A stretch of DNA of 64,000 bases from Vitrella brassicaformis CCMP3155 (Eukaryota > Protista > Chromerida): contig CDMY01000322.1 of the NCBI GenBank assembly GCA_001179505.1, positions 1-64,000 on the forward strand, written 5' to 3'. Positions within the stretch are counted from its first letter, which is position 1. Each line of letters starts with the position of its first letter. Positions 19,611 through 54,269 of the stretch are shown here, piece by piece. Below the pieces are notes generated by a model. It saw nothing but the letters and a program-made list of their open reading frames with translations, did no database searches and was not told the origin of the DNA. Made by a program: the position numbers and the translations under genes.

Positions 19611-19864
19611 CTCTACGTCGCCCTCGCACACCACACCACCATTGTTTGACGTCGGTTTGTTCCCTCTTCCACCTCGAGATGAGCGAGCTTTGAGCTTGCG
19701 CCACTTCTTCTTCAAGAACAAGTCTTCTCGCTCACTCTGAGCTTAGGGCGACGCAGGAGCCACGCAGACGGGTACCTCTGTCGATATTCGTCGATTGTGA
19801 GAATCGGCACTCATCCGATCTGCCGCTGCTATACCTCTCTCGCCGGCAGATCATCACATCCGCC

Positions 19865-20843
19865 GTGAAGTGCCCGTCGGCCACCACCACGGCCACAGCA
19901 GACAGCCTCGACAAGCCAGCAGAGGAGATGAGCGGCCGGCCGATGCTGCTCAATGTGGGCGGCTTCGTCGTGGCGTTCCCTCGGGATGTGCTGCTGTGCG
20001 AGGGGCTGCGGGACACCTGCCTGGCGGTGCTGCTGAACCGCTTCGACAGCTGGATGATCACAGACGACAATCGCATTCACTTCATTGACGCCGACCCCTT
20101 CTACTTCATCTGGTGAGGGGGAGGGAGGGAAGCAACACGATGGCTGACAGGCAGCAGCACTCGCCGTGTGTGTGTTCAGGTTGACTGTGAAGCTTCGGCA
20201 CCTGAGCTGCAGCCGCATCGACGTGAGTGAGATCATCGAGGGCTGCCCCGCACTGGCCTTCTACCACGACCGATTCTTCGCCAAGACGGCCGTCACCATC
20301 GAGCCGCAACACGGTGACCACGACAGCGAGGCGTTCCGGGGCTTCATGGCCGTCATGGGGCCCTTCATCAGCTCATCGGTGGCGGGCGGGACGGGCGGCA
20401 GTGAGGTGCTGAGTGTGCNNNNNNNNNNNNNNNNNNNNNNNNNNNNNNNNNNNNNNNNNNNNNNNNNNNNNNNNNNNNNNNNNNNNNNNNNNNNNNNNNN
20501 NNNNNNNNNNNNNNNNNNNNNNNNNNNNNNNNNNNNNNNNNNNNNNNNNNNNNNNNNNNNNNNNNNNNNNNNNNNNNNNNNNNNNNNNNNNNNNNNNNNN
20601 NNNNNNNNNNNNNNNNNNNNNNNNNNNNNNNNNNNNNNNNNNNNNNNNNNNNNNNNNNNNNNNNNNNNNNNNNNNNNNNNNNNNNNNNNNNNNNNNNNNN
20701 NNNNNNNNNNNNNNNNNNTGTGGCGGATGGCGGTGTGGTGGCCACGACCGACGCGACGCTGGCCGACTACAGCATACTGCACGACCGATTCATCAAGTAG
20801 GTCGACAGGCGGAGATGAGATGGCGTGGCGGTCATCTTGGCAC

Positions 20844-20880
<37 letters not shown>

Positions 20881-22472
20881 GTATGGGCCCGTCGCGAATG
20901 TGTCGGCAGACACCTTCCACAAGTAACACACCACAGCAGCAGCCAGGCGGCACACGAAATCTCCATGTGTGTGTGGTGTGTGCAGGGTGGTGGATTACGT
21001 CCGCCGCATTCGGTTGGCCCCCGACGCCGCCACGCCGCTGCCGACGAGCAGTTGACCTGACGAGCTGCTGTATGCCTGTGACATGTACGGCCTCATGGAG
21101 CGGGTGTACCTCTCGATGATCGGCAAATCGCACAGCCACATCAAATGCCTCTTCAAGTGAGTCACAACACACATCAGAGGGGCGCAGGAGGGAGATGCCA
21201 TGTGTTGATTTGGATGCCTTTGTGTGTCAGGAGTTCGTCTGACGGTGGAGAGTTTGGCACTCTGGTAGAGCGAGTGGCGGGTGTGAGCGGCCTGCTGTTC
21301 GTCATCCAGGACGACAAGCAGCACACCATCGCCTGCCACATCGACGGGCCCCTCATCTCCCCGGTTGGGCCCACATCAGCACTGACCATCGGCTGCCCCG
21401 TGACCTTCTACTCCATCAGTGGGCCATTTGAGGAGGGCGGCATCGCCAAGATCACCCCGCCGCACTACTGGCAGCGTGTGGATGTCGCCGGCGTAGGGGG
21501 GGGGGTGCTGGGCAGCAAGGGCCTCGGCGGCAAGGTGTGCATCGGTGGCGGCCGCCTGTGGCTGGGGTATGGGGAGAGGATGCACGGCCGTCTGTGGCTG
21601 GGGTATGGGGATGATGGGCGGCCGGCTGGCGACCTGCGCAGCTGTCTCCAGTGGGTGTGGAGAGATGAGCTGCCCGACGACAAGTCATACGTGGGCAGCA
21701 TCAGCGAGCAGAGACGGACCACGTTAGCCGCCGGCATCGCCAAGATCGACGTGCCGCATGGCGAGCAGTGCGTGCAGGTCGCCGGCGCAGAGGGGGTGGT
21801 GAAGGACCGCAATGGAGCGACGCCTGGCAAGGTAGCCATCGGTGGCGGCCGTCTGTGGCCGGGGATGGGCAAGGGGCGGCCGGCTGGCGACCTCCACCGC
21901 TGCTGTCAGTTTGTGGAGGGGAGTGAGCTGCCCGACGACAAGACGTACGTGGGTGACATCGAAGCGGAGGGAGTGGCCACCCTTGCTGCCAGACACTGGT
22001 TCACCGCCCAGCGACTTGAGGTGTACCAGGTCAGACCGACACGTCAAGTGGACGGACGTCATCATGTCGATGTGACGTGTGTGTCCATGTGTCGATGTGT
22101 GTGTCTGTTTAGGTGTGGAGCACTCTCCCGGCTGACCCCATCCTCCCCGCTGATGACCTGCAGGCCCTCATCGACATGACACGCGGCGTTGGGATGACCG
22201 CCCAGCTGCTCCACAAGTGGGTCAGCCAGTGATTAGCGTCGAAGCTGTCGTATCAGCATGGCACTGTGTATCTCTCTCCTGTCTGTCCGGCTGTGTCAGG
22301 GGCGAGCGTGACGGCTGGGCAAACGAGACGATGCTGGCCAAGGCGGGCGGGGCGGCCGACCTGCTGCTGGTGGCCAAGGACACCGGCAGCCACACATTCG
22401 CCACCCACATCGAGGGACGGCTCAAGCAGCCAGCCGACCCCTTTGACATTAAGACGACATGCTGCCCCGTGA
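19865..22472 (+). CDS. BTB-BTB-TLDc-TLDc family gene, copy 1 (interrupted by gap 2, 3' part cut by gap 3)
   Basis: KCTD-type BTB MLLNVGG..FIDADPFYF; second BTB-like unit EVLSVRVADGGVVATTDATL..FHKVVDYVRRIR; TLDc-like units CLFK-SSSDG..HTIACHIDG..FTAQRLEVYQV and LLHK-GERDGW..HTFATHIEG. Confidence 0.8.
20419..20718. other. Assembly gap 2 (300 N)
   Basis: Run of N inside BTB exon 2. Confidence 0.99.
21523..22472 (+). repeat. 950-bp segment identical to 37549-38498
   Basis: Same sequence and identical six-frame ORF translations at a constant offset of 16026 bp. Both copies abut N gaps. Confidence 0.92.
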
Positions 22473-22772
22473 NNNNNNNNNNNNNNNNNNNNNNNNNNNN
22501 NNNNNNNNNNNNNNNNNNNNNNNNNNNNNNNNNNNNNNNNNNNNNNNNNNNNNNNNNNNNNNNNNNNNNNNNNNNNNNNNNNNNNNNNNNNNNNNNNNNN
22601 NNNNNNNNNNNNNNNNNNNNNNNNNNNNNNNNNNNNNNNNNNNNNNNNNNNNNNNNNNNNNNNNNNNNNNNNNNNNNNNNNNNNNNNNNNNNNNNNNNNN
22701 NNNNNNNNNNNNNNNNNNNNNNNNNNNNNNNNNNNNNNNNNNNNNNNNNNNNNNNNNNNNNNNNNNNNNNNN
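22473..22772. other. Assembly gap 3 (300 N)
   Basis: Run of N between BTB-TLDc copies 1 and 2. Confidence 0.99.
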
Positions 22773-24528
22773 GCAGACACCTTCCACAAGTAACCCACCA
22801 CAGCAGCAGCCAGGCGGCACACAAAATCTCCATGTGTGTGTGGTGTGTGCAGGGTGGTGGATTACGTCCGTCGCATTCGGTTGGCCTCCGACGCCGCCAC
22901 GCCGCTGCCGACGAGCAGTTCACCCGACGAGCTGCTGTATGCCTGTGACATGTACGGCCTCATGGAGCGGGTGTACCTCTCGACGATCGGCAAATCGCAC
23001 AGCCACATCAAATGCCTCTTCAAGTGAGTCACAACACACAACAGAGGGGCGCGGGAGGGAGATGCCATGTGTTGATTTGGATGCCTTTGTGTGTCAGGAG
23101 TTCGTCTGACGGTGGAGAGTTTGGCACTCTGGTAGAGCGAGTGGCGGGTGTGAGCGGCCTGCTGTTCGTCATCCAGGACGACAAGCAGCACACCATCGCC
23201 TGCCACATCGACGGGCCCCTCATCCCCCCGGCTGACCCCACATCAGCGCTGGGCAGCGGCTGCCCCGTGACCTTCTACTCCGTCAGTGGGCCATTCGAGG
23301 AGGGCGGCATCGCCAGGATCACCGTGCCACACCACTGGCAGTGGGTGGAGGTCGCCGGCACCGAGGGGACGTTGAACGCCGACAATGGAGTGACGGCTGG
23401 CAAGGTGTGCATCGGTGGCGGCCGCCTGTGGCTGGGCTATGGGAGGCGTGGGCGGCCGGCTGGCGACCTCCGCCTTTGCCATCAGTGGTTGTGGAGAGAT
23501 GAGCTGCCCGACGACAAGACGTACGTGGGGACCTTCGACGAGGAGGGATGCGCCACGTTAGCCTCCAGCGACTATTTCACAGCCCAGCGACTCGAGGTGT
23601 ACCAGGTCAGACCGACAAAGTAGATGGCATCACGTGGTTGTGATAAATGAGTGTGTGTCTGTTTAGGTGTGGAGCACTCTCCCGGCAGACCCCATCCTCC
23701 CCGCCGATGACCTGCAGGCGCTTATCGACACGACACGCCACATAGGGATGACCGCACAGCTGCTCTACAAGTGATGAGGCATTGATGAGCTGGGGGCCGT
23801 GGTCGCATAATCGTGTTATTTCCCTTGTGTGTGCGTGCGTGTGTGCGTGTGTGTCAGGGGTGAGCGTGACGGCTGGGCGCACGAGACCATGTTGGCCAAG
23901 GTGGGCGAGGCGGCCGATCTGCTGCTGGTGGCCAAGGACACCGGCAGCCATACCTTCGCCTGTCACATCGAGGGACAGCTCAAGCAGCCCGCCGACCCCA
24001 CTGGAGTGGCGGCAGTACGCTGCGCCGTGACCTTCTGCTCCATCAGCGGCGCATTCATCGAGGGCGGCATCACCAAGATCACCGTGCCACATGACGAGCA
24101 GCATGTGCAAGTCGCTGGCACAGAGGGGGCGGTGATGGCCAGCAACACGGGCGTGGCCGGCAAGGTAGCCATCGCTGCCGGCCGGCTGTGGCTGGGTTAC
24201 GGGGAGGATGAGCGGCCGCCTGGCGACCTCCGCAGCTGCCATCAGTGGGTGTGGAGAGATGAGCTGCCCGACGACAAGACACACGTGGGCAAGGTGAGCG
24301 AGCAGGGACGGGCCACCCTGGCCGCCAGCCTCTTCTTCACGTGTGTCGATTTGGAGATCTACACGCTGCAGGTCAGCACAGAAGGGCCAGGGAGAGGACG
24401 GGGGCATATATTAGTGTTTTGCCCGTGGTGATTGTGCTGTGCTGTTTCTGTCTGTGTGTGTTCAGGTGCCGGATGGCTGGCAGTGGCTGAGTGCGGTCGC
24501 GGACATCATGCTCTCACAATCGACGTGA
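22773..24528 (+). CDS. BTB-BTB-TLDc-TLDc family gene, copy 2 (5' part lost in gap 3)
   Basis: Exons VVDYVRRIRL..KCLFK, TLDc-A (~23098-23590), linker VWSTLPADPILP, TLDc-B (~23858-24372), last exon VPDGWQWLSAVADIMLSQST-TGA at 24526-24528. Confidence 0.82.
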
Positions 24529-25476
24529 GAGCTGTCTGTCGAGGGGCGGAGGGAGCGGGGAGAGTAGCCAGTGAGTGCGTTGGGATGGTCGGCACGTGCG
24601 GGACATCAGATTTTGCCATCGCTTATAATTATGCTCGCGTGTGTCCATACTGTCCGTCCTCTGTATGTATTTGTCTATCGTCTGTCTAGTGTGGGCATAC
24701 ATATCGGCGGACATATCTGCAGTGAACGTGACTGAATGCATGTCACGCTGCGTGTCTTTTATCGCCTCGTGTGCTACGTGTCATCATGTATTTGTCGCCA
24801 TCTTCTTCCTTGGTCCACTCTCCCATCTGGGTCACGGATGTGGTCTCTCCCATCTGGTGCATCTGATGCATAGATATGTCCCGACTCCATCCCGTCTCAC
24901 GAGGCTGCGATGAATCGTTCTCCTCCATCATCCGAACTGTGCGTTGAGAGAGATCAAGTTTGAACGCTTCTTCGTCGCCCCACGACAGCATATATATTTG
25001 TGGCTTGATGATCCATCCATCCGTCCATTCCTCCATCCGTGAAGCCACAGTCCGATGTCTGCCTATGCACTGCAGGCCATCGATGGCTGCAGCTGTGTCA
25101 GTCAGCAATGCCACGCAGAGAGAGTCACATGCAGAAGACATGACGACACCCTCTGCCCTCATCGCAACACTCCACCTCTCTGTCTGTCTGGCCCTCTGTC
25201 CCTGTCTGGCCCTCTTTCTGGCTCCTCGCACCAGCCGCCTCGGTGGCCGAGCTTGTGGCCGAGTGCCGCTCCCTTCGTGCCAATCGTCCGCAGGGCCGTG
25301 TGGCTTGCTGTTAGCAGCTGCATGTGACTTCGTCCGTGTCGGACCTCCTCTCTTGCAAGACCCATCCAAGAGAGGGAGAGGAGAGGAAAAGTGAGAGCCG
25401 GGGGGGCCAAGACGGGCCGTTTCGATCCTCGCCAAAGCTCGCCGAAAGGGAAAGATGGTTTGATGGGCGATGACAG

Positions 25477-28400
25477 AGGAGATTCTGCAGCGCAAGTTCG
25501 CCAACCAACTGAGCCTCCTCCAGGTGGGAAAACGACAAACGAATCCAGTGGTGCACTCGAAGCACTTCTGATGCATTCATTTGCCTGATGGCAGTTTGAG
25601 CACGAAAAGAAGCTCCAGGGCTTCAATCTGGAGATTACACGCTCAAGACCAGCCCCAATCTCACGAGGTAGCCACAAACGACCACAAAATAACGGCGCCG
25701 ATGATGCATTCTTCTCATCCATCTTGAATGCTTTCCATGTGTGTATTCCTTCGTGTAGGCGCATCTGCAGCAGCTGGGCATCCGCCATCACCTCCCCAGA
25801 CCGCCCCTCTGCACGCCTCATCTCGCCCACCCGCCCGCACACCACCTCTCGACTCAAGCCCCATCGCGCCCAGGCCACATGCGCTGCACACATCTCTCGA
25901 CCACCACGACAGAGGGCGGGCTTCAGCCATGCAAAGGAGCGGGCCGGGCGTGTTCGTGACGGCTGATCGCGATGTGAATGTGATGGACGCAGAGAGGGCG
26001 GGCGAGAGGGCGATGAGGCGCCATGGTGGCGGGATGGGTGTTGAGGACGATAGGGATGATGGCGGGGAGAGGGAGGGGGAGGGCAGTGTGGTGAGTGACC
26101 AGTATATCGCCCAGCTGGAGGCCCATAACCAGAGGCTGCTGGACTTTCTCCAGCAGCAGGGCGAGGTGAGTGACGAGATCATTGACGACATCATTGCAAT
26201 CGACGCAGCGGCCATTGTGTTCTCCTCTTTTGTGGATGTGCCTGCAGAGCGTATCTAGCGTTGAGAAGAAGGTTGATAGCGTCCGATCGGACCTGTTGAA
26301 TGAGTTGTCGACCCTCCGCACGCAGAACCGCCAGCACTTCTCAAAGTACACGGCTCCACACGAGGAGGCCATCGCAGGTGGGAGGGCGGGATGATGAGGG
26401 TGAATGGGACGCTGCACACGGCTGGCTTCCAAATGCGTCCTGCTGTGTGTGTGTGGTGTTCTGCAGAGGTCCGTGAGGGCATGAAGGTGCTCTCGAGTGA
26501 CATCAGAAAGCTGGCACAAGTGAGCTACGCGCGAAAAGCCACCAACACACACCATTTTGCCATTCCTTGCTGTCGGGGTACAGGATGTGGAGGAGTCACG
26601 GCGGCATGCGGGCGAGGGCAATGACACCTCTGCCCAGCTGGAGGAGCTGCGCTCCCACCTGCAGACCCTGCAGCACCAAGTCCGACAGATCGAAACACAG
26701 CAGGGCCATTCGTGCAAAGACAAGCCACAGACATCGGTAGGAAAAAGAAAAGGACGAGCCGCTCCAGGTCTCATAGGTTGTCAAGGCTGCTCTGGGCTGG
26801 GTGCAGGATTGGCTGGGTGCTCTCCTGAGGCATGGCGAGGGCAGCGAGGAGGGTGACACATCTGGCCCGTCTGGCCGGAGAGTGGCCGAACTCATGACTA
26901 ACATCGCCAAACTACGGCAGGGTGAGGTGAACACGCAACTACACACCAGATACCCTACAGGTCCATACGATCTGCCTGCGTTCCCCAGAGGCCGAGGCTC
27001 GCATCGGCACGCCCAAGTTGGCTGTTATCGGCGATGGTGACGAGCCCAGCCAGGGCCTGACAGAGGTGCTGTGCCACTTTCTCCAGCTGCTGGAATCCAC
27101 AGTCGAAATCACATCGGACGTCTGCCTACAGAACCAAGGTGAGAGACCGTAGGAAAAAGGACGGAACCTTGTGGCGTCAACCTACTTGCCCTTCATGTCA
27201 TGTGCCCATGCAGCTATCCGTGCGGTGCTCCTTCATTCCACGATGCAGCAGGGGTCGAGGGACGACAGCCGCGATGCTGGGCCGTATGGGCTGGCTCTCC
27301 CGTCCGGCGGGTCGGTTCCTCTCGAGCGGATCGGCAAGGCTCTGCGCCAGCTGGCTGATGCGCCGGGCGAGACACGGGAGGTGGCCCAGCTGCGGGAGAG
27401 GCTGCAGCTGCTGGAGGGTAGGAAATGGGATGCCGGGCCGGAGGCGGCACGCGGACCAAATGACGGCGCTTTTTGTTTGTGGTTCGATTTGCAGGCAGAG
27501 TTGAGAAGGGGGGTGGCGACGAGTCGAGGGAGAGGCTGCACGACCAAATCAGACACCTCAGGGAGAAAATCAAAGGTAGAGACACGAATCCTCTTTGCAG
27601 GGCTGCTGGATGGATGGATGGATGCCTTATGCAGGCGTTGAGGATGCGTATCGTGGTGAGCTTCGCGAGCTGCAGGACCAGATACGCCACCAACGAGACT
27701 ATGCCAGAGACCAGCGGACCATCACAGAAGGCCAAAAGTACCCACGCAAATCCTCCACCCCTCCCCCCTATGCTGCCTTTGCGTTTTCCATAGGCCAGTG
27801 GATCTGACGTGGGTGCGTGAGGAGCTCGCCTTCCTGCGCAGGGGCGTCAAGGACCTGCTGCGTGAGCCCCCACACGAGCCTTCACAGCCCGAAGCGGAGC
27901 AGGAGAACCTGCAGCCGGTGCTGTCACAGCTGCAGGCCGAGGTCAATGGTAAGCAGATGACAGGAATTTCCGCAACGAGGGCGGGTGACTGGGCAGTTTC
28001 TTCTCTTCTCTTATGTCAGATTTGCGTGAGCGTTGGAGTGAGGAGATCCAGGCGCTGAGCAAGGCGGGCGACAGCAGGGTGGAGACGCGGGGGCCAAAGG
28101 ACCGGCCAGACGAGGACAGTTGGACCAGAACCACCACGGCCGACACCGCCATCAACCCACGCCTCACAGGTGCAGAGCAAAAAGCAAACACATGGATGCG
28201 CTCTTTCATTACTAAACCTATCTCACATCAGAGCGGGACACCATGGCGGCCACCGGCGCATTCCACCCCCTCCTTAGGTCCCAGCCGAGCCATGCGAGTG
28301 GTGCCCAGGACCCCAAGGGCTCCCATTCGGCCGCCGAGGTGTGCCGGGCCATCAGCCATCCCCCATATCGACGGACGAGCATCCCGCCTGCTGATCGTGA

Positions 28401-29512: not shown

Positions 29513-29846
29513 GAACCTGGGTGTCATGCATGGGTGTGTTGTGTGTTGTGGGTGAGAGTGACGGCGGTGGCTGCGCTGTGCTGTGAACGGACAGCCAGCA
29601 CGAGATCAGATCTATCAAGCGGTCTCTACTATACAGTCAATTGATTGCCATATATACCAAATCGGTGTCTGCATGTCTGGCATGCACACACACACACAAG
29701 TTGACACCATCATGAATGAAACACAGGCAGCAGCAGCAGCAGCAGCAAAACCAGCAGCAAGAGAAACCAGTCAGCCAACAGAGAGAGGGGAAGAACCTCC
29801 ATCGGCCAGGCCATCCCCCACCCCTCCCTCCCCCATCTACACCCAT

Positions 29847-32310: not shown

Positions 32311-32990
32311 TCACGGCGATTGTGAGAGCACGATATCCGCCACCGCCGCCAGCCACTGCCAGCCATCCGGCACCTGAACACAGAGAGGAAGCACAGCAGA
32401 GCACAATCACCGTGGTCGAAACACCCATGTGCTTCCCCTCCTCCCCCTGGCCCCTCTGTGCTGACCTGCAGTGTGTAGATCTCCAAATCGACACACGTGA
32501 AGCAGTGGCTGGCGGCTAACGTGGACCGTCCCTGCTCGTTGATGCTGCCCACGTACGTCTTGTCGTCGGGCAGCTCATCCCTCTCCACCCACTGTTGGCA
32601 GCGGCGCAGGTCGCCAGCCGGCGCATCCCCCCCAATCCCCAGCCACAGGCGGCCGCCAGCGATGGACACTTTGGCCCAGGGCAAGCCCTTGTGGTTCTTC
32701 ACCGCCCCCTCTGTGCCGGCGACCCCCATTCGCTGCTGCTCATTTGGCATGGTGATCTTGGCGATGTCCGGCTCCTCGAATGCGCCACTGATGGAGTAGA
32801 AGGTCACGGGGCACCGTCTCCACGCCACTCCGGTGGGGTCGGCAGGCTGCTTGAGCTGTCCACTGCAGTGGGTGGCGAATGTGTGGCTGCCGGTGTCCTT
32901 GGCCACCAGCAGCAGGTCGGCCGCCCCGCCCACCTTGGCCAGCATGGTCTCATACGCCCAGCCGTCACGCTCACCCCTGACACACACGCG

Positions 32991-33031
<41 letters not shown>

Positions 33032-34834
33032 GGTGATGCGACCACGGCCCCCGGTTCATCAATGCCTCACTCACTTGTAGAGCAGCTGTGCGGTCATCCC
33101 TATGTGGCGTGTCGTGTCGATGAGGGCCTGCAGGTCATCGGCGGGCAGTATGGGGTCAGCCGGGAGAGTGCTCCACACCTAAACAGACACACACGTAGAC
33201 ACACACTCATATTATCACATCGACATGATGACGTCCGTCCACTTGATGTGTCGGCCTGACCTGGTAGACCTCCAGCCGCTGGGCTGTGAAGTAGTAGTCG
33301 CTGGCGGCCAGGGTGGCCACTCCCTCCTCGATCATCTTGCCCACGTACGTCTTGTCGTCGGGCAGCTCATCCCTCTCTACCCACTGATGGCAGCGGCGGA
33401 GGTCGCCAGCCGGCCGCCCATCCTCCCCATAACCCAGCCACAGCCGGCCGGCAGCGATGCACACCTTGCCAGCCCCGCCCTGGTCGCTCTTCACCGTCCC
33501 CTCTGCGCCGGCGACCTCCACACACTGCTTGTTGTGTGGCACGGAAATCTTGGCGATGCCGCCCTCCTCGAATGGCCCATTGATGGAGTAGAGCGTCACG
33601 GGGCAGCCGATGGTCAGCGTCGATGTGGGGTCAGCCGGGGGGATGAGGGGCCCGTCGATGTGGCAGGCGATGGTGTGCTGCTTCTCGTCCTCGATGACGA
33701 ACAGCAGGCCGCTCACACCCGCCACTCGCTCTCCCAGACTACCAAACTCTCCACCGTCAGACGAACTCCTGACACACAAAGGCATCCAAATCAACACATG
33801 GCATCTCCCTCTTGTCCCCCTCTGTTGTGTGTTGTGACTCACTTGAAGAGGCATTTGATGTGGCTGTGCGATTTGCCGATCGTCGAGAGGTACACCCGCT
33901 CCATGAGGCCGTACATGTCACAGGCATACAGCAGCTCGTCAGGCCAACTGCTCGTCGGCAGCGGCGTGACGGCGTCGGGGGCCAACCGAATGCGACGGAC
34001 GTAATCCACCACCCTGCACACACCACACACACATGGAGATTTTGTGTGCCGCCTGGCTGCTGCTGTGGTGGGTTACTTGTGGAAGGTGTCTGCCGACACA
34101 TCCGCGACGGGCCCATACCTACACACACACACACAGAGTGCCCGAGATGACCACCATAATATCTCATCTCCGCCTGTAGACCTACTTGATGAATCGGTCG
34201 TGCAGTATGCTGTAGTCGGCCAGCGTCGCCTCGGTCGTGGCCACCACACCGCCATCCGCCACACGCACACTCAGCACCTCACTGCCGCCCGTCCTGCCCG
34301 CCACCGATGAGCTGATGAACGGCCCCATGACGGCCATGAAGCCGCGGAACGCCTCGCTGTCGTGGTCACCGTGTTGCGGCTCGATGGTGACGGCCGTCTT
34401 GGCGAAGAAGCGGTCGTGGTAGAAGGCCAGTGCGGGGCAGCCCTCGATGATCTCACTCACGTCGATGCGGTTGCAGCTCAGGCAGCGCAGCTTCTCAGCC
34501 AACCTGAACACACACACAGCGAGTGCTGCTGCCTGTCAGCCATCGTGTTGCTTCCCTCCCTCCCCCTCCACCAGATGAAGTAGAAGGGGTCTGCGTCAAC
34601 GAAGTGAATGCGATTGTCGTCTGTGATCATCCAGCTGTCGAAGCGGTTCAGCAGCACCGCCAGGCAGGTGTCCCGCAGCCCCTCGCACAGCAGCACATCC
34701 CGAGGGAAAGCCATGACGAAGCCGCCGACATTGAGCAGCATCGGCCGGCCGCTCATCTCCTCGGCTGGTGTTTGGTCTGCTTGTTTGTGGATGCCGTCTG
34801 CTGTGTCCGTGCTGCTGGACGCCGACGCCTTCAT
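32311..34834 (-). CDS. BTB-BTB-TLDc-TLDc family gene, copy 3 (complete, apparently intact)
   Basis: Same exon set as the other copies on the minus strand. ATG at 34834 (MKASASSS..EEMSGRPMLLNVGG); stop TGA at 32311-32313. Confidence 0.88.
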
Positions 34835-35057
34835 GGCGGATGCGGTGCTCCTATGGCGAGAGAGGGAAGCAGCAAGGAGATGGGATGAGTGGATGTGCTC
34901 CGAATCGATCGATATCGACAGATGCGGCACTCCGCTTCGCCCTCTCCTGCGAAGCCTCAAAGCCTCAAACGACGAAGCTCTCGAGCTGCAGCTCAGATTT
35001 GCCAATCTCCACGTGCCGCAGAGCGGAGGACAGCGGCGAACTGCCACAGCAGCAGAT

Positions 35058-37248: not shown

Positions 37249-37548
37249 NNNNNNNNNNNNNNNNNNNNNNNNNNNNNNNNNNNNNNNNNNNNNNNNNNNN
37301 NNNNNNNNNNNNNNNNNNNNNNNNNNNNNNNNNNNNNNNNNNNNNNNNNNNNNNNNNNNNNNNNNNNNNNNNNNNNNNNNNNNNNNNNNNNNNNNNNNNN
37401 NNNNNNNNNNNNNNNNNNNNNNNNNNNNNNNNNNNNNNNNNNNNNNNNNNNNNNNNNNNNNNNNNNNNNNNNNNNNNNNNNNNNNNNNNNNNNNNNNNNN
37501 NNNNNNNNNNNNNNNNNNNNNNNNNNNNNNNNNNNNNNNNNNNNNNNN
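37249..37548. other. Assembly gap 4 (300 N)
   Basis: Run of N joining a lactate permease exon to a TLDc exon. Confidence 0.99.
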
Positions 37549-38995
37549 CTCGGCGGCAAGGTGTGCATCGGTGGCGGCCGCCTGTGGCTGGGGTATGGGG
37601 AGAGGATGCACGGCCGTCTGTGGCTGGGGTATGGGGATGATGGGCGGCCGGCTGGCGACCTGCGCAGCTGTCTCCAGTGGGTGTGGAGAGATGAGCTGCC
37701 CGACGACAAGTCATACGTGGGCAGCATCAGCGAGCAGAGACGGACCACGTTAGCCGCCGGCATCGCCAAGATCGACGTGCCGCATGGCGAGCAGTGCGTG
37801 CAGGTCGCCGGCGCAGAGGGGGTGGTGAAGGACCGCAATGGAGCGACGCCTGGCAAGGTAGCCATCGGTGGCGGCCGTCTGTGGCCGGGGATGGGCAAGG
37901 GGCGGCCGGCTGGCGACCTCCACCGCTGCTGTCAGTTTGTGGAGGGGAGTGAGCTGCCCGACGACAAGACGTACGTGGGTGACATCGAAGCGGAGGGAGT
38001 GGCCACCCTTGCTGCCAGACACTGGTTCACCGCCCAGCGACTTGAGGTGTACCAGGTCAGACCGACACGTCAAGTGGACGGACGTCATCATGTCGATGTG
38101 ACGTGTGTGTCCATGTGTCGATGTGTGTGTCTGTTTAGGTGTGGAGCACTCTCCCGGCTGACCCCATCCTCCCCGCTGATGACCTGCAGGCCCTCATCGA
38201 CATGACACGCGGCGTTGGGATGACCGCCCAGCTGCTCCACAAGTGGGTCAGCCAGTGATTAGCGTCGAAGCTGTCGTATCAGCATGGCACTGTGTATCTC
38301 TCTCCTGTCTGTCCGGCTGTGTCAGGGGCGAGCGTGACGGCTGGGCAAACGAGACGATGCTGGCCAAGGCGGGCGGGGCGGCCGACCTGCTGCTGGTGGC
38401 CAAGGACACCGGCAGCCACACATTCGCCACCCACATCGAGGGACGGCTCAAGCAGCCAGCCGACCCCTTTGACATTAAGACGACATGCTGCCCCGTGACC
38501 TTCTACTCCATCAGCGGCGCCTTCGAGGAGGGCGGCATCACCAAGGTCACCGTGCCGCGCACCTATGCCGACCACGGTGTGACGGTCGTCGACACAGAGG
38601 TGGAGCTGGTGGGCACAATGGGCAGCAAGGGCACGGCTGGCAAGGTGTGCATCGGTGGGCACCGGCTGTGGCTGGGGCTTGGGGGTCATAGGGAGCCGGC
38701 AAGCGACCTCCGCAGCTGCTGTCAGTTGGTGGGGAGGGATGAGCTGCCCGACGACAAGACGTACGTGGGCAGCATCAACAAGGAGGGATGGGCCACGTTA
38801 GCCGCCAGCCACTGCTTCACGTGTGTCGATTTGGAGATCTACACGCTGCAGGTCAGAGGGGCCAGCGGGAGGAGGGGGGCACATGAGTGTTTTGATTCCG
38901 TTGCCCTCCTGTTTCTGTCTGTGTGTGTGCAGGTGCCGGATGGCTGGCAGTGGCTGAGTGCGGTGGCCGATATCATTCTCGGCCAGTCGACATGA
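37549..38995 (+). CDS. 3' half of a BTB-TLDc gene (TLDc-A end, linker, TLDc-B, last exon); probably the true continuation of copy 1
   Basis: First 950 bp are identical to 21523-22472. The sequence then continues with unique TLDc-B sequence to VPDGWQWLSAVADIILGQST-TGA. Confidence 0.8.
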
Positions 38996-44700: not shown

Positions 44701-47294
44701 TTAGTCCTCGTCCATGTCGTCGTCGTCTTCTTCATCATCTTCATCGTCCTCCTCCTCATCGTCGTATCTCATGTGCAGTTTGCCCTTCTGCGTGTCGCTC
44801 ATCTTGATCTGGAGACAACAGACAGACAGACAGACAGACAGAAAGGCAGATGGAGATAGACGGCAGGTCACGGCTATGTCCTCGATAGACACGTACCATG
44901 CCCGTTGCCTTCCTCTCCCGCAGCTTCTTGGACCGCTTCGATTTCCGGTCGGAACGACCGAACTCCTCGTCCTCCTGCAGACAAACACGGAGACACACAT
45001 TCGTATGACCGCAAGTTAGTTGGTTGTGTGTGGGTGGGTCTGATGCTCACATCTTCATCCTCGATGTCGGTGTCGTGTCCAGTGAAGCCCACTCCCCTAT
45101 TGTTGGGCGAGTCGTCTTCCTCTCCGAACTCCTGCGACTGCTGGCCAGGAGTGTTGGGCTCGCTGTCGGCAGTCAGCAGCTTCTGCTGGGAGGCACTCAT
45201 TTTGATCTGTCCAGTGGGCCGGCGCGCGAAGAGCTTGGCCTTCCTTTCTGCTGCCCTTTTGCGAGAGTGGAAATGAACTTCGTCATCGGTTTCTTCGTCC
45301 TTGACCCTGCTGTCGAATTTGATGCGACCAACAGCCTGAGGCACTTCAGGCAAGTCATCCTCTTCGTCATCGTCTGGGCCGCCAAACTCCGATGGTGCCT
45401 CGCTGTCGCCAGCGTCGATGAGGGCCTTTTGCTGGGCCGGGGTGAGCTTCAGCTGACCAGTGGCCTGTAAGTAAAAGCGAAGAGGCGACAACCGATGTGT
45501 GTGTTCGGATGAGTTTGGTGGTCGTGCCGTAGTACTTTTCTGGCGAGGAGTTTGGTGTGTCTGGCTGTTTTCCTGTGTCTCTCGTTGAACGTATCATCGT
45601 CATCGTCTTCGACGTCGGTGTCATGTCCAGTGAAGGCCACGCCCTTCTTGTCACCTTCCTCCTCCTCCATGGCGAACCTCGCCGCCGTCGCCGGGAGTCG
45701 GAGGCTCGCCGCCCCACCTTTACCCTTGGCCTTTTGGCTACGGGCCGGGGCCGACTCCTCATCGTCAGCATCGCCATCCCACCACTCCTGTGGTTCATCC
45801 TGTCCGGGCGTGCTGGGCTCGCTATCAGCCGTCAGCAGCTTCTGCTGCGATGAAGTCATTTTGATCTGTCCGGTGGGCCGCCTCGCGCCAAGCTTGGCTT
45901 TCCTCTCCGCCGCTCTTTTGCGGCTGTGGAAATGAGCTTCGTCATCGGTTTCTTCGTCCTTGACCCTGCTGTCGAACTTGATGCGGCCGACGGCTTGCGG
46001 CACCTCAGGCAAGTCATCCTCCTCGTCCTCGTCTGGGTTGCCAAACTCCGATGGTGCCTCGCTGTCGCCAGCGTCGATGAGGGCCTTCTGCTGGGCCGGG
46101 GTGAGCTTCAGCTGACCAGTGGCCTGTAAATAAGGACGAAGACAGCAAAAAGTTTTGTGGTGAGGAGTTTCTGTTCTCTCAGGGATCGTGCTGCAGTACT
46201 TTTCTGGCGAGGAGTTTGGTGTGTCTGGCTGTTTTCCTGTGTCTCTCGTCGAAGGTATCATCGTCATTGTCGTCGACGTCCGTGTCGTGTCCGCTGAAAT
46301 TGACGTGTCCATGTGCCTTGGGGCTGATGGGGGACTCCTCGCCTGAGAAGACGATGAGACCGCTGCGAGTATCTCGGACACTGCATGAAATACCGCCCAC
46401 CTATGTCCATATGGTCCTCGTCAGTTTCATCCTCTACGTCTTTGCCCAGGGTTATCGGACCTGAATGCAATGCGCATCACCACATGCACATACCAGAGCC
46501 GGCGAGCCCTCAGTGATGCTCACCGGTCTTTTTCCTCTGCAGGAGTTTCTGCTTCCTCTTGACCCTCCTGCCTGTGTCATTGAATCCTTCGTCGGCATCT
46601 CCTTCCTCTACCACCTTGCCGCTGAACTTGACCCCTCCACTCTCCCTCACCGCACCCGGCAAAGGCGTCTCGCCGTCGCCGCCAGACGTCATCATGGGGT
46701 GGGTGAGCACCGACGGGTCCTCCACCAGGCCGGCTTTGTCCTTCTTGTCGATGACGATGCTGTCGAGATCACCCAGGGGAGGCGCCGACCTGGCGTTGGG
46801 TGTGTTGAGATTGCTGATCGGCGAGCCGACCTTGGCCGAGGGGCCCTTTGACGAGATGCGGAGGGCTGATTTGGGGGGAGACATGACACTGCCAGGCTGC
46901 TTCTTGACGGGAGCTGACGTGGATAGACGGAGAGACCACATGGACGTGAGGGCGAGGAAGCGCTTTTGTTCTGTGCGTTTATACCTTCTAGCTCTTCGCG
47001 GTCGAGCTGTCCTGAGCCCTTTTTGCTGTCGTTGGTGATGTCAAGCAGGCCCTTGCTTCCTGAACGAGACCCGACTCGAGACGCCCCTCGCGACGCCGCT
47101 GCTTCGGGAGCACAACGAAATGATGGAGGCACTAGCGCTGTCCAAGTGCTCATGTTACCGAAGCTTCTGATTCTGGACAACAAGTTGCCCTTTTCCCTGA
47201 GCTCCTGGACCTTGGCCTTGAGTCTGTCGACCATCCGCTCGCTCTTGCTGCGGCCTCGCTGGAGCTTATGCTTGTCCCTGAGCTCCTGAGTCAT
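44701..47294 (-). CDS. Acidic/basic low-complexity repeat protein with repeated V-x-F..RK/RR-x-TG modules (5' end uncertain)
   Basis: Open exons with repeated GHDTD(V/I)(E/D)D and KL(L/F)ARK/R-x-TGQ-x-K motifs; stop TAA at 44701-44703. Confidence 0.65.
45140..46298 (-). repeat. Intragenic tandem duplication, period about 660 bp (exon-intron-exon)
   Basis: ~45140-45632 versus ~45800-46298: exon parts are near-identical (ATGQLKLTPAQQKALIDAGDSEAPSEF..) while the intervening introns have diverged. Confidence 0.9.
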
Positions 47295-50600: not shown

Positions 50601-51329
50601 TGAGTGTTTGTGTACCATCGTGGCGCCATATCCAACCCTAGAGACGGGACACACACAGGACAAAGCAACAGCAATCGACCGGTGCTGCCGCCCTCCACGT
50701 GTGGATGTGATGTGGCTGACCGATATCAGCGGGTATGTGCATCCGGCCGTCACAAAGCAGAGAAGCCCGAAGCTACGAAGCGAGATGCGCTCAGCCACAG
50801 GGCCACTGAGAATCGTTGTCGCTGACCGACCATCACAGACACTTACTTGCCCAACGCAAACACATGTCGGTTGGTTGGTGGCATTTCTCACCGAGTCCGG
50901 CGAAGACAAGGTGGAAGAAGTAGAAGGCCAGGTCATCGGGGTCAGAAAACACGCTCAGAGAACGAAAGGCAAACGAATACCCTGCACACAACCGATACAG
51001 GACAGAACAGAAAAAGAAAGGCGAGCAAGGCCTTGCCACAATCCCCCTGGCGGCCACCCCCCGTACGCACCGATGTATGTGTAGCTGACGATGGTGATGA
51101 GGAAGTCGATTGTGTTCTTGACGAGGATGCTGTTGGCGTTCTTGCCGGCCACACATGCCGCTTCGACCATGGCGAATCCCGCCTGCATCAGGAAGATGAG
51201 GTAGGCCGACTGCAGGATGTACCCCTCGTTGACCGAGTTGCGAAACGCCGCATCCTCGCACCCGCCCGAGGTGACGACGAACGTGTCGAAACACTCACCG
51301 AACACACACGAAGTGCTGTTGGTGGCCAT
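47630..51329 (-). CDS. AMT: Ammonium transporter (Amt/Mep/Rh) with C-terminal C2 domain
   Basis: FLMQAGFAMVE, FVDFAGGTAVH, GTFLLWFGW, WPIHGAAGIWG, LRVSRQEELEGLD. In-phase exons then give GTLRIKLEKAEL..IFVEVRL..THAVEYGNPVWNE..YVIGDVYF. The last exon is less certain. Confidence 0.88.
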
Positions 51330-51789
51330 GGTCGCTCAGCAGGTCAGGGGGGAAAGGTGAAAGGGGTAACGCAAGAGGGGCAGAAGGGAAAGCCCCAATG
51401 CTCGTGTGTAGACGTAGACTGTCGTCCTCCTGCGCCCGTAGTCAGCGGCCTTCGACGTCAGGCTCCCGCGGCTGCTGGAGGCCTCATGGCACACATGCGC
51501 AGAAGAAAGTCAAAGGTGTGGTTCTCTGGAGCACTAGGAAAAGGCCTGAAGTGTTCGGAAACGCTCCCGCGTCTCGCATGGGTGGGGGCTTCTGGGGGCC
51601 AGCGACCCGTTTCACGCTTTTCCCAAACACAGAAAGAGTCATCCTCTCCAATTGAGCTTAGCGAGGCTAGCGAGAGCATCAGGGTGACACAGAAGGTCAC
51701 CTTTGTCGATATTCGCTGAGTTTGAGAATCGGCACTCATCCCATCTGCCGCTGCTATACCTCTGTCGCCAGCAGATCATCACATCCGCC

Positions 51790-54269
51790 GTGAAGTGCCC
51801 GTCGGCCACCACCACGGCCACAGCAGACGGTGCCGACAGACTAGCAGCGGAGATGAGCGGCCGGCCGATGCTGCTCAACGTGGGCGGCTTCGTCATGGCG
51901 TTCCCTCGGGATGTGCTGCTGCGCGAGGGGCTGCGGGACACCTGCCTGGCGGTGCTGCTGAACCGCTTCGACAGCTGGATGATCACAGACGACAATCGCA
52001 TTCACTTCATTGACGCAGACCCCTTCTACTTCATCTGGTGAGGGGGAGGGAGGGAAGCAACACGATGGCTGACAGGCAGCAGAACTCGCCGTGTGTGTGT
52101 TCAGGTTGGCTGTGAAGCTTCGGTACCTTAGCTGCAACCGCATCGACGTGAGTGAGATCATCGAGGGCTGCCCCGCACTGGCCTTCTACCACGACCGTTT
52201 CTTCGCCAAGACGGCCGTCACCATCGAGCCGCAACACGGTGACCACGACAGCGAGGCGTTCCGGGGCTTCACGGCCGTCGTGGCGCCGTTCATCAGCTCA
52301 TCGGTGGCGGGCGGGACGGGCGGCAGTGAGGTGCTGAGTGTGCGTGTGGCGGATGGCGGTGTGGTGGCCACGACCGACGCGACGCTGGCCGACTACAGCA
52401 TACTGCACGACCGATTCATCAAGTAGGTCTACAGGCGGAGATGAGATGGCCTGGTGGTCATCTTGGGCACCGTGTGTGTGTGTGCAGGTATGGGCCCGTC
52501 GCGAATGTGTCGGCAGACACCTTCCACAAGTAACACACCACAGCAGCAGCCAGGCGGCACACGAAATCTCCATGTGTGTGTGCTGTGTGCAGGGTGGTGG
52601 ATTACGTCCGTCGCATTCGGTTGGCCCCCGACGCCGCCACGCCGCTGCCGACGAGCACTTGGCCTGACGAGCTGCTGTATGCCTGTGACATGTACGGCCT
52701 CATGGAGCGGGTGTACCTCTCGATGATCGGCAAATCCCACAGCCACATCAAATGCCTCTTCAAGTGAGTCACAACACACATTAGAGGGGGACAAGAGGGA
52801 GATGCCATGTGTTGATTTGGATGCCTTTGTGTGTCAGGAATTCGTCTGACGGTGGAGAGTTTGGCACTCTGGTAGAGCGAGTGGCGGGTGTGAGCGGCCT
52901 GCTGTTCGTTATCGAGGACGAGAAGCAGCACACCATCGCCTGCCACATCGACGGCCCCCTCATCCCCCCAGCTGACCCCACATCGACGCTGACCATCGGC
53001 TGCCCCGTGACCTTCTACTCCATCAGTGGGCCATTCGAGGAGGGCGGCATCGCCGAGATGACCGTGCCGCACACCGAGCAGCGTGTGATAGTCGCTGGCA
53101 CAGAGGGGGCGGTGAAGAACCCCCAGGGCTTGCGCGTGGGCAAGGTAGCCATCGGTGGGGGCCGTCTGTGGCTAGGGGTCGGAGAGGATGGGCGGCCGTC
53201 TGGCGACCTCCGCAGCTGCTGTCAGTGGGTGGAGAGGGATGAGCTCCCCGACGACAAGGCATATGTGGGTGACATGAGTGAGGACGGCCGGGCCACCATA
53301 GCTGCCAGCCACTGGTTTACCGCCCAGCGACTGGAGGTCTACCAGGTCAGACCGACAGACACATCAAGTGGACTGACGTCATCATGTCGATGTGACGTCT
53401 CTGTCCATGTGCGTCTGTGTGTGTCTGTTCAGGTGTGGAGCACTCTCCCGGCCGACCCCATCCTCCCCGCCGATGACCTCCACGCCCTCATCGACATGAC
53501 ACGCGACATATAGATGACCGCCCAGCTGCTCTACAAGTGGGTCAGCCAAAGATGAGCCGGGGGCCGTGATGCTATCAGCGTATCTCTCTCCTGTCTGTCC
53601 GGCTGTGTCAGGGGCGAGCGTGACGGCTGGGCGCACGAGACCATGCTGGCCAAGGTGGGCGAGGCGGCCGACCTGCTGCTGGTGGCCAAGGACACCGGCA
53701 GCCACACATTCGCCAGCCACATCGAGGGACAGCTCAAGCAGCCGGCCGACCCCACTGGAGTGGAGACGACATTCTGCCCCGTGACCTTCTACTCCATCAG
53801 TGGCGCATTCGAGGAGGGCGGCATCGCCAAGATCACCGTGCCACATGTCGAGCAGCGTGTGACAGTTGCGGGCACAGAGGGGGCGGTGATGGCCAACAAC
53901 GGGTGCGGGAGCGGCAAGGTGTCCATCGGTGGCGGCCGCCTGTGGCTGGGTGGTGTGGGGGAGGGGCAGCCGGGCGGCGACCTGCGCAGCTGCCATCAGT
54001 TTGTGCGGAGGGGTGATCTTCCCGACGACAAGGCGTACGTGGGCACCTTCAGGGAGGGGGGACGGCCATCTTAGCCGCCAGCCACTGGTCCACATGTGTC
54101 GATTTGGAGATTTACACACTGCAGGTCAGAAAGGGCCAGCGGGAGGAGGGGGGCACATGAGTGTTTTGATTCCGTTGCCCTCCTGGTTCTGTCTGTGTGT
54201 GTGCAGGTGCCGGATGGCTGGCAGTGGCTGAGTGCGGTGGCCGACATCGTGCCCTCACAATCGCCGTGA
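51790..54269 (+). pseudogene. BTB-BTB-TLDc-TLDc family gene, copy 4: premature TAG in linker exon and frameshift in TLDc-B (truncated gene or pseudogene)
   Basis: GAC ATA TAG at 53511-53513 where other copies read GGG. One base is missing at ~54061-54067 (GGA CGG CCA TCT TAG versus GGA CGG GCC ATC TTA). Confidence 0.8.

What the first reader, a model, noticed from the sequence alone, without database searches (positions are those of the whole stretch)
19771..54269. Dispersed BTB-BTB-TLDc-TLDc family with conserved scaffold and hypervariable TLDc segments: candidate diversifying receptor/adaptor repertoire
Seen: four copies (19.9-22.5, 22.8-24.5, 32.3-34.8 and 51.8-54.3 kb; the 37.5-39.0 kb piece appears to be the 3' end of the first). 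BTB exon 1 differs by about 2 of 62 residues between copies and intron 1 by 1-2 bases. The same TLDc positions vary wildly: KITPPHYWQRVDVAGVGGGVLGSKGLGGKV / RITVPHHWQWVEVAGTEGTLNADNGVTAGKV / KISVPHNKQCVEVAGAEGTVKSDQGGAGKV / EMTVPHTEQRVIVAGTEGAVKNPQGLRVGKV. Variation also follows RLWLG and YVG, between near-invariant anchors (PVTFYSISG, GGRLW, GDL, ELPDDK). Exon patches more divergent than introns suggest diversifying selection. Established: KCTD-type BTBs oligomerise and often recruit Cullin-3; conserved-adaptor/variable-recognition families (F-box, MATH-BTB) are implicated in anti-pathogen defence in plants and nematodes; TLDc domains bind V-ATPase. Inference: an uncharacterised immune-like ubiquitin-ligase adaptor repertoire using TLDc as the variable recognition domain.
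Basis: partly seen in the sequence, partly recalled or inferred. Interest (0 to 1): 0.85.

Follow-up and report, generated by a model that had tools for sequence, protein, structure and literature searches.

The report
Fast-evolving BTB-TLDc gene family in Vitrella
A coral-associated alga (Vitrella brassicaformis) carries dozens of copies of a gene whose front half is kept nearly identical between copies. A few matching surface positions in its two TLDc domains are under selection to differ, as expected for a recognition-protein repertoire, but the target is unknown.

Summary
The window is bases 1-64000 of Vitrella brassicaformis scaffold CDMY01000322.1. It holds four copies of an 8-exon gene encoding BTB (KCTD-like), a second BTB fold, and two TLDc domains.

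- **Copy state:** only copy C (CEM02265.1) is complete and intact. B is cut by a gap. A has a TGA stop and an extra in-frame cassette. D has a TAG stop and a 1-nt deletion.
- **Assembly:** 21523-22472 is 100% identical to 37549-38498, a contig overlap. Two public gene models spliced across gaps are chimeras.
- **Domains:** the architecture is confirmed by Pfam, a confident AlphaFold model and fold search.
- **Mosaic:** the 5' half, introns included, differs 3-8% between copies and the 3' half 15-21%. The switch point is shared and sits at the first hypervariable strand.
- **Selection:** codon site models still support positive selection in both TLDc domains (2dlnL 57 and 47) at homologous positions. 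The BTB control gives 0.
- **Family:** about 29 full-length paralogues, all in Vitrella, none described in the searched literature.
- **Untested:** Cullin-3 binding, an immune role and expression.

The scan noted this family three times before, on other scaffolds of this genome.

The parts
19771..20418 (+). Copy A, 5' piece: about 160 nt of upstream similarity, exon 1 (19928-20112), intron 1, and the first 239 nt of exon 2 (from 20180).
   Evidence: 95% identical to copy D 51695-52343; exon projection; open frame.
20419..20718 (.). Assembly gap inside exon 2 of copy A. Its true length is probably 1 nt.
   Evidence: The flanks align to adjacent positions of C and D with one base missing. 239+1+78 = 318 nt, which is the exon 2 length in C and D.
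20719..22472 (+). Copy A, middle: rest of exon 2, exon 3 (20881-20922), exon 4 (20986-21156), exon 5 (21231-22029), exon 6 (22113-22216) and the start of exon 7 (22300-22472).
   Evidence: The public model P0114 starts after the stop codon and splices across the next gap into copy B.
21053..21055 (+). In-frame TGA stop in exon 4 of copy A, in the second BTB fold. The other copies have TGG or TCA here.
21733..22026 (+). Second, diverged copy of the hypervariable cassette in exon 5 of copy A. It is in frame and 77-82% identical to the first unit, which starts at 21439. A 12-codon micro-duplication lies at 21553-21609.
   Evidence: Exon 5 is 799 nt in A against 508 nt in the other copies; internal repeats; coordinates.
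37549..38995 (+). Copy A, 3' end. The first 950 nt duplicate 21523-22472 exactly. It then holds the rest of exon 7 (38326-38851) and exon 8 (38933-38995).
   Evidence: 100% identity over 950 nt, from contig start to contig end. The public model P0001 fuses this piece to a lactate permease across the gap.
22773..24528 (+). Copy B. It begins inside exon 3 at the gap edge. Exons 4-8 are intact (458 codons, only the terminal stop).
32311..34834 (-). Copy C, the only complete intact copy. It equals P0116 / CEM02265.1 (659 aa). Exons: 34834-34572, 34503-34186, 34118-34077, 34013-33843, 33768-33261, 33178-33075, 32976-32466, 32373-32311.
   Evidence: Spliced translation has one terminal stop and matches P0116. 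Pfam TLD 44.4 bits. AlphaFold2 pLDDT 90.6.
33534..33651 (-). Shared switch point between the homogenised 5' block and the diverged 3' block, in exon 5. It lies just before the first hypervariable strand.
   Evidence: The maximum chi-square breakpoint of all 21 pairs among 7 paralogues falls in this 118-nt interval.
33318..33530 (-). TLDc1 sites with posterior above 0.9 for omega greater than 1 (P0116 residues 345, 347, 349, 363, 378, 396, 415). One more site, residue 268, lies outside this span at 33759-33761.
32532..32831 (-). TLDc2 sites with posterior above 0.9 for omega greater than 1 (P0116 residues 518, 523, 549, 551, 553, 567-569, 583, 596, 600, 617). They are homologous to the TLDc1 set.
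51695..54332 (+). Copy D. The coding part is 51853-54269. Exons end or start at 52037, 52105-52422, 52488-52529, 52593-52763, 52838-53345, 53433-53536, 53612-54124 and 54207-54269.
   Evidence: It is annotated in two pieces, P0125 (434 aa) and P0004 (152 aa).
53511..53513 (+). In-frame TAG stop in exon 6 of copy D, where the other copies have GGG. It ends the protein after TLDc1.
54060..54070 (+). 1-nt deletion in exon 7 of copy D, after 54065 in a G/C run. Exon 7 is 513 nt here, against 511, 514 and 526 nt in the other copies.

Best explanation
Shown:
- These are members of a multigene family specific to Vitrella brassicaformis. There are about 29 full-length paralogues, within a wider expansion of about 111 TLDc clusters.
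- Each gene has 8 exons. It encodes a KCTD/T1-like BTB domain, a second BTB-fold domain and two tandem TLDc domains, ending in a conserved C-terminal helix.
- The family turns over by birth and death: 3 of the 7 closest relatives carry stops or frameshifts.
- The 5' 1.2-1.3 kb, from exon 1 to mid exon 5 with its introns, is nearly identical between copies, even across scaffolds.
- From a fixed boundary at the first variable strand onwards, the copies are old and diverged.
- In each TLDc domain about 5-8% of codons evolve with omega of 3-4, at homologous positions in the two domains. Three of these positions in each domain are alternate residues of one beta-strand, separated by near-invariant residues.

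Inferred:
- Gene conversion is what homogenises the 5' block.
- The BTB part is a constant oligomerising or effector-docking module, possibly binding Cullin-3.
- The two TLDc domains are the recognition module for a changing partner. The changing partner could be a pathogen or mobile-element protein, or another party in a genetic conflict.
For: - **Organism and scaffold:**
- **Exon structure:** shared by 14 paralogues.
- **TLDc identity:** P0116 scores 44.4 bits on Pfam TLD against a 24.5-bit cut-off. Foldseek's top 15 hits are all TLDc, E 2e-7 to 4e-5. VIA-align gives Z 13.7-16.9 and rmsd 2.5-3.2 A over 151-163 residues to mEAK7, OXR2, NCOA7B, TBC1D24, Oxr1 and Rtc5p.
- **BTB identity:** residues 161-256 match BTB/T1/Elongin C folds at Z 7-9. 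The family profile hits only KCTD17, KCTD9, SHKBP1, KCTD5 and one Kelch BTB in the first domain.
- **Mosaic:** dS is 0.04-0.07 in the BTB part and 0.2-0.5 in the TLDc part. Introns 1, 3 and 4 differ 0-8% and introns 5-7 differ 9-35%. The breakpoint is shared.
- **Selection:** M2a against M1a gives 2dlnL 57.0 for TLDc1, 47.3 for TLDc2 and 0.0 for the BTB part. With intact genes and gap-free columns it is 37.6 and 16.3. The selected sites are homologous in the two domains.
- **Pairwise estimates:** variable patches have dN 0.37-0.40 and dS 0.27-0.34, while the rest of the TLDc part has omega 0.30-0.39.
- **Lesions:**
Against: - The site models are my own implementation. The topology is fixed and the branch lengths are held proportional to an M0 tree.
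- Gene conversion between paralogues is evident here and can inflate such likelihood-ratio tests. No recombination-aware test was run.
- Pairwise omega in the patches is only 1.2-1.5, and the patches were chosen because they vary.
- Two of the four window copies are broken, so part of the variation is decay.
- No transcript of any of the 29 full-length paralogues turned up in the protein collection, although other Vitrella TLDc proteins have MMETSP transcripts.
- BTB1 is below the Pfam threshold (13.6 against 21.4 bits).
- Cullin-3 binding, the oligomeric state and solvent exposure of the selected residues were not tested.
- Known TLDc proteins bind V-ATPase (PMC8608904, PMC9263379), not ubiquitination substrates.
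Confidence: 0.6

Rival explanations
1. The family and the selection are as described, but the proteins are BTB-oligomerised regulators of the V-ATPase or another fixed cellular machine. This is the canonical role of TLDc domains. They would not be ubiquitin-ligase adaptors, and the variable positions would tune or diversify that interaction.
For: All structurally characterised relatives found by fold search are V-ATPase binders (PMC8608904, PMC9263379). A conserved C-terminal helix follows TLDc2, and mEAK7 also has one (my own knowledge, not checked here). Not all KCTD-type BTBs bind Cullin-3 (my own knowledge).
Against: A fixed, highly conserved partner such as the V-ATPase does not obviously explain omega of 3-4 at surface-strand positions. 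It also does not explain about 29 paralogues with rapid turnover.
Confidence: 0.2
2. There is no adaptive diversification. The variable patches are unconstrained loops in a family that is largely decaying. The likelihood signal comes from gene conversion, loop misalignment and the inclusion of pseudogenes.
For: Three of the 7 closest paralogues have lesions. Pairwise patch omega is only 1.2-1.5, with one of five pairings not significant against local dS. The loops carry indels. Recombination is evident.
Against: The signal persists with intact genes and gap-free columns. It is absent from the BTB control run through the same pipeline. The selected sites are at homologous positions in two independently analysed domains, and they alternate with invariant residues in one strand. 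The non-patch part of the TLDc domains keeps omega 0.30-0.39.
Confidence: 0.12
3. The multiplicity is an assembly artefact, from collapsed or duplicated haplotigs or mis-scaffolding, rather than real paralogues.
For: The region has four 300-N gaps. One 950-nt stretch is present twice at 100% identity.
Against: Only that one stretch is duplicated. A, B, C and D differ 13-19% in the TLDc exons and have different flanking genes. Further paralogues lie on at least ten other loci.
Confidence: 0.02

Closest known systems
MATH-BTB (BATH) and F-box adaptor families of nematodes and grasses
   Same: These are lineage-specific expansions with a constant cullin-docking domain and a variable substrate-binding domain. 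They show birth-and-death turnover and positive selection limited to the recognition domain (PMC4091423, PMC8120010; the original work on nematode and plant families is cited from my own knowledge).
   Different: Here the variable domain is a tandem pair of TLDc domains, not MATH or FTH/FBA. The BTB is KCTD/T1-like and is followed by a second BTB fold. The host is a unicellular chromerid alga. Cullin binding is not shown.
TLDc proteins (OXR1, NCOA7, TBC1D24, mEAK7/TLDC1, TLDC2; yeast Oxr1p, Rtc5p)
   Same: They share the fold (Z 13.7-16.9) and the Pfam family. TLDc is a protein-protein interaction domain with no known catalytic activity (PMC8608904). NCOA7-AS is an interferon-induced antiviral factor (PMC8329711).
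   Different: Known members are single-copy and conserved, have one TLDc domain, and bind V-ATPase. Here the TLDc is duplicated in tandem, fused to BTB domains, massively expanded, and under positive selection in its C-terminal two thirds.
KCTD proteins and Kv channel T1 domains
   Same: The first domain gives its best sequence matches to KCTD17, KCTD9, KCTD5 and SHKBP1. The second domain superposes on KCTD and T1 domains.
   Different: There are two BTB folds in tandem. The C-terminal partner is TLDc rather than the KCTD C-terminal domain. The sequence score is below the Pfam BTB_2 threshold.

Membership tests
TLDc domain (Pfam PF07534) | Score above the Pfam gathering threshold | tested here: met
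   P0116 (copy C) scores 44.4 bits against a 24.5-bit cut-off, in two stretches. Single exons alone are below threshold, with a best E-value of 0.001.
TLDc domain (Pfam PF07534) | TLDc fold | tested here: met
   The model has pLDDT 90.6. Foldseek's top 15 hits are all TLDc. VIA-align gives Z 13.7-16.9 for residues 439-641. TLDc1 was matched only with the weaker single-domain model, at Z 3.7-5.7 with the top 6 hits all TLDc.
TLDc domain (Pfam PF07534) | Binding to V-ATPase V1 subunits | not testable with these tools
   This needs a pull-down or a complex prediction.
BTB/POZ, KCTD/T1 type (Pfam PF02214) | Score above the Pfam gathering threshold | tested here: not met
   BTB_2 scores 13.6 bits against a 21.4-bit cut-off on exon 1. 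There is no hit on P0116:1-130. The family profile against PDB hits only KCTD-type BTBs, but at E 0.04-1.7.
BTB/POZ, KCTD/T1 type (Pfam PF02214) | BTB fold | tested here: met
   Residues 161-256 match SLX4 BTB, Elongin C, KCTD15, KCTD9, KCTD17 and Kv T1 at Z 7-9.2 and rmsd 2.5-3.2 A. The first domain (about residues 30-125) was not searched alone. It has the same predicted strand-helix order.
BTB/POZ, KCTD/T1 type (Pfam PF02214) | Homo-oligomerisation and Cullin-3 binding | not tested
Adaptively evolving cullin-adaptor repertoires (MATH-BTB / F-box type) | Lineage-specific expansion with turnover | tested here: met
   There are 29 full-length paralogues and 111 clusters at 50% identity. All 20 representatives that were looked up carry Vitrella names or have Vitrella cluster members. 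Lesions are found in A, D and P0123.
Adaptively evolving cullin-adaptor repertoires (MATH-BTB / F-box type) | Positive selection confined to the recognition domain | tested here: met
   2dlnL is 57.0 and 47.3 for the two TLDc domains and 0.0 for the BTB part. It is robust to removing broken genes and gapped columns. No recombination-aware test was run.
Adaptively evolving cullin-adaptor repertoires (MATH-BTB / F-box type) | The adaptor bridges a cullin and its substrates | not tested
   This is inference from the domain type only.

The most novel reading that the evidence does not exclude
The TLDc domain, known only as a conserved V-ATPase-binding module, has been recruited in a chromerid alga as the hypervariable recognition domain of an oligomeric BTB adaptor repertoire used in a host-parasite or other genetic conflict. 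The hypervariable cassette, running from the 'GIAKI' strand to 'TLAAS', would be a recombination module. It would be protected from the gene conversion that homogenises the rest of the gene, and it is occasionally duplicated, as in copy A.
Probability: 0.25. Interest if true: 0.85.

Novelty: new variant of a known kind. Interest (0 to 1): 0.62.

Why it matters
- Innate-immunity-like recognition repertoires are barely known in unicellular algae, and unknown in the photosynthetic relatives of apicomplexan parasites.
- If these proteins are conflict-driven adaptors, they add TLDc to the short list of folds used as diversified recognition domains.
- They would also give a handle on what chromerids defend against in the coral holobiont.
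- For TLDc biology, the selected positions mark a candidate ligand-binding face that is not obvious from the conserved animal and yeast proteins.
- Practically, the work flags two chimeric public gene models and a mis-scaffolded stretch in the reference assembly.

Tried and rejected
- **Ancestral states:** a per-site substitution count on reconstructed ancestors was planned. I made no reconstruction by any other means and used likelihood site models that sum over internal states.
- **Single-exon searches:** these gave only sub-threshold TLD and BTB_2 hits, and an 8-sequence profile found no TLDc in PDB sequences. The single-domain model was poor, at pLDDT 61. The full-length protein and a 44-sequence alignment resolved this.
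- **Transposon carriage:** no terminal inverted repeats bound the roughly 2.6-kb duplication unit.
- **Literature:** searches for Vitrella with TLDc, Vitrella with BTB, and TLDc with KCTD found nothing relevant. A Symbiodinium paper that mentions TLDC2 and an RCC1-BTB gene concerns unrelated single genes.
- **IQ-TREE codon runs:** these gave trees, but I did not find omega in the report file. My M0 fit to the same trees gave a branch-scale factor of about 1.0, which I take as a consistency check.
Full report
**1. What the sequence is**

The window is GC-rich (about 58%) and has four 300-N gaps. Proteins encoded in it are exact or near-exact matches to Vitrella brassicaformis CCMP3155 entries. 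A look-up of copy C returns record CDMY01000322.1 (121,886 nt, GCA_001179505.1), positions 22311-44834, which are the same numbers as in the window. The window is therefore bases 1-64000 of that scaffold.

**2. Checking the observation**

A self-comparison gives four copies plus one special case. 21523-22472 is 100% identical to 37549-38498 over 950 nt. This match runs from the first base after the gap at 37249-37548 to the last base before the gap at 22473-22772. A very recent duplication hidden by the gaps cannot be excluded.

The gene has 8 exons with GT-AG introns that end in (TG)n-CAG. The same exon pattern (about 318, 42-45, 171, about 505, 104, about 511 and about 60 nt) recurs in ten paralogues on other loci.

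**3. The gaps**

- **Gap 20419-20718:** it lies inside exon 2 of A. Its flanks align to adjacent positions of C and D with exactly one base missing, and 239+1+78 = 318 nt is the exon length in C and D. The exon is in frame if the gap is really 1 nt, but this is not read.
- **Gap 22473-22772:** it separates exon 7 of A from exon 3 of B.
- **Gap 37249-37548:** it separates a lactate-permease gene from exon 5 of A.

Nothing may be read across the last two gaps. The public models do exactly that. P0114 (778 aa) joins A to B, and P0001 / CEM02266.1 (999 aa) joins the permease to the A 3' end.

**4. State of the copies**

| Copy | State |
|---|---|
| C (34834-32311, minus strand) | Intact. Equals P0116 / CEM02265.1, 659 aa. 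|
| B | Intact from mid exon 3 onwards. Its 5' end is lost in the gap. |
| A | TGA at 21053-21055 in exon 4, and exon 5 enlarged by an in-frame, diverged second copy of the variable cassette (units start at 21439 and 21733). |
| D | TAG at 53511-53513 in exon 6 and a 1-nt deletion after 54065 in exon 7. Annotated as two genes (P0125, P0004). |

Among the closest relatives elsewhere, P0123 also has a frameshift in exon 7.

**5. Domains**

- **Sequence:** single exons score below threshold. Full-length P0116 passes Pfam TLD at 44.4 bits against 24.5, in two stretches.
- **Model:** with a 44-sequence family alignment, AlphaFold2 gives pLDDT 90.6 and pTM 0.85.
- **TLDc fold:** Foldseek's 15 best PDB hits are all TLDc structures, at E 2e-7 to 4e-5. 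VIA-align gives Z 13.7-16.9 and rmsd 2.5-3.2 A over 151-163 residues for residues 439-641 against mEAK7, OXR2, NCOA7B, TBC1D24, Oxr1 and Rtc5p.
- **Second BTB fold:** in the same search every further row is a BTB/T1/Skp1/Elongin C fold on residues 161-256, at Z up to 9.2.
- **First BTB:** the first domain is recognised by sequence. Family profiles hit only KCTD17, KCTD9, KCTD5, SHKBP1 and one Kelch BTB in PDB, but weakly, at E 0.04-1.7.

The architecture BTB-BTB-TLDc-TLDc is therefore right. The 'KCTD-type' label for the first BTB is likely but sub-threshold.

**6. Family size and distribution**

A profile of the eight TLDc exons was scored against 1.84 billion cluster representatives. It finds 111 proteins at E up to 0.001. 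All 20 that I looked up are Vitrella proteins or cluster with one. A word-indexed search with a full-length paralogue lists 30 proteins. Twenty-nine carry Vitrella names, and the remaining unnamed JGI protein clusters with a Vitrella protein.

The copies are dispersed among unrelated genes. In the window these are an Arf GTPase, a lactate permease, ribosomal L7Ae, an HRD1-like RING ligase and an ammonium transporter. A fifth copy, CEM02285.1, lies at 100 kb on the same scaffold.

I found no paper on this family. UniProt gives only automatic domain names.

**7. The mosaic**

Segment by segment, exons 1-4 and introns 1, 3 and 4 differ 0-8% between copies. Exons 5-8 differ 8-19% and introns 5-7 differ 9-35%. 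Synonymous divergence is 0.04-0.07 in the BTB part among window copies and 0.2-0.5 in the TLDc part.

A maximum chi-square scan of all 21 pairs among seven close paralogues, two of them on other scaffolds, puts every breakpoint at 33534-33651 in copy C coordinates. This is immediately before the first hypervariable strand. Divergence is 3-8% on the 5' side and 15-21% on the 3' side.

Because silent sites and introns follow the same pattern, the conserved front half reflects homogenisation, most simply gene conversion, and not protein-level constraint alone. It also means intron 1 is the wrong neutral yardstick for the TLDc patches.

The extra cassette in copy A starts at the same boundary motif. 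This suggests the cassette edge is a recombination boundary, but that is inference.

**8. Selection**

*Pairwise counts.* I used Nei-Gojobori counts on three independent pairs, in five alternative pairings.

- Omega is 1.2-1.4 locally (p 0.014-0.19) and 1.3-1.5 against pooled 3' dS (p 0.0002-0.009).
- The remaining TLDc codons have omega 0.30-0.39.

This alone is compatible with neutral loops, given that the patches were chosen for being variable.

*Site models.* I therefore fitted GY94 F3x4 site models M0, M1a and M2a by maximum likelihood to 14 paralogues on IQ-TREE codon trees.

| Region | 2dlnL, M2a vs M1a | Share of sites in omega>1 class | Omega of that class |
|---|---|---|---|
| TLDc1 | 57.0 | 5.4% | 4.3 |
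| TLDc2 | 47.3 | 6.5% | 3.2 |
| BTB part (control) | 0.0 | none | none |

With the three broken genes removed and only gap-free columns kept, the values are 37.6 and 16.3.

*Selected sites.* Sites with posterior above 0.9 are P0116 residues 268, 345, 347, 349, 363, 378, 396 and 415 in TLDc1. In TLDc2 they are 518, 523, 549, 551, 553, 567-569, 583, 596, 600 and 617. The two lists, obtained independently, fall at homologous alignment positions. Residues 345/347/349 and 549/551/553 are alternate residues at or in predicted strands 347-351 and 551-555. The intervening Q346, V348 and V350 are more than 90% conserved across the family. That pattern is what one face of a surface strand would give, and is hard to get from misalignment or recombination.

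*Caveats.* The code is my own. The topology is fixed and branch lengths are proportional to M0. No recombination-aware test was run. Solvent exposure and clustering were not computed.

**9. Mechanism**

*Shown.* The architecture, the expansion, the turnover, the 5' homogenisation with a fixed boundary, and site-specific omega above 1 in both TLDc domains.

*Inferred.* The BTB pair is a constant oligomerising or docking module, and the TLDc pair is a recognition module that tracks a changing ligand. The Cullin-3 link rests only on the KCTD-like BTB. The 'immune-like' label rests on analogy with MATH-BTB and F-box families (PMC4091423, PMC8120010) and on NCOA7-AS being an antiviral TLDc protein (PMC8329711).

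Known TLDc domains bind V-ATPase (PMC8608904, PMC9263379). A V-ATPase-directed role is the main functional rival.

None of the 29 full-length paralogues has a transcript-derived member in the protein collection, whereas other Vitrella TLDc proteins do. This is weak evidence against expression, because only sequences at 90% identity or more from another strain would have clustered with them.

**10. Verdict**

It is a new variant of a known kind: an adaptively evolving BTB-adaptor-like family that uses TLDc as the variable domain. It occurs in an alveolate alga and is not described in the literature I could search. The scan's first readers noted the same family on three other pieces of this genome.

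Noticed in passing
window 34893-38995 and 21083-24528: Two public gene models are chimeras spliced across assembly gaps. CEM02266.1 (P0001, 999 aa) fuses a lactate permease to the 3' end of copy A. P0114 (778 aa) fuses copy A exons 4-6 to copy B exons 4-8.
   Followed up: yes
window 21523-22472 and 37549-38498: A 950-nt stretch is present twice at 100% identity, running from a contig start to a contig end. The contig 22773-37248 is probably misplaced between two overlapping contigs.
   Followed up: partly
proteins P0028, P0031, P0046, P0048, P0050 (other Vitrella scaffolds): There is a second expanded Vitrella architecture. A Tc5/pogo transposase DNA-binding domain (HTH_Tnp_Tc5) is fused to tandem TLDc domains, in proteins of 890-1190 aa.
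   Followed up: partly
L003:1-2598 (CDMY01000295.1): The gene next to paralogue P0113 carries an OAS1_C domain (C-terminal domain of 2'-5'-oligoadenylate synthetase). Ankyrin-repeat genes flank three other paralogues (L001, L002, L004).
   Followed up: no
window 34834-34927: Copy C (minus strand, start 34834) and the lactate-permease gene (plus strand, start 34893) diverge from a 58-nt spacer. A TCGATATCGA palindrome lies at 34900-34927. A related TGTCGATAT motif sits upstream of copies A and D.
   Followed up: no
window 34832-34834 compared with 19850-19852 and 51775-51777 (approximate): The upstream start codon used by copy C and by distant paralogues (N-terminus MK.S.S) is GTG in copies A and D. 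These two must start 26 codons later, if they are expressed at all.
   Followed up: partly
window 45141-45628 / 45800-46292 and 56598-56816 / 57299-57514: Two further direct repeats unrelated to this family, at 85% identity over 490 nt and 78% over 220 nt.
   Followed up: no
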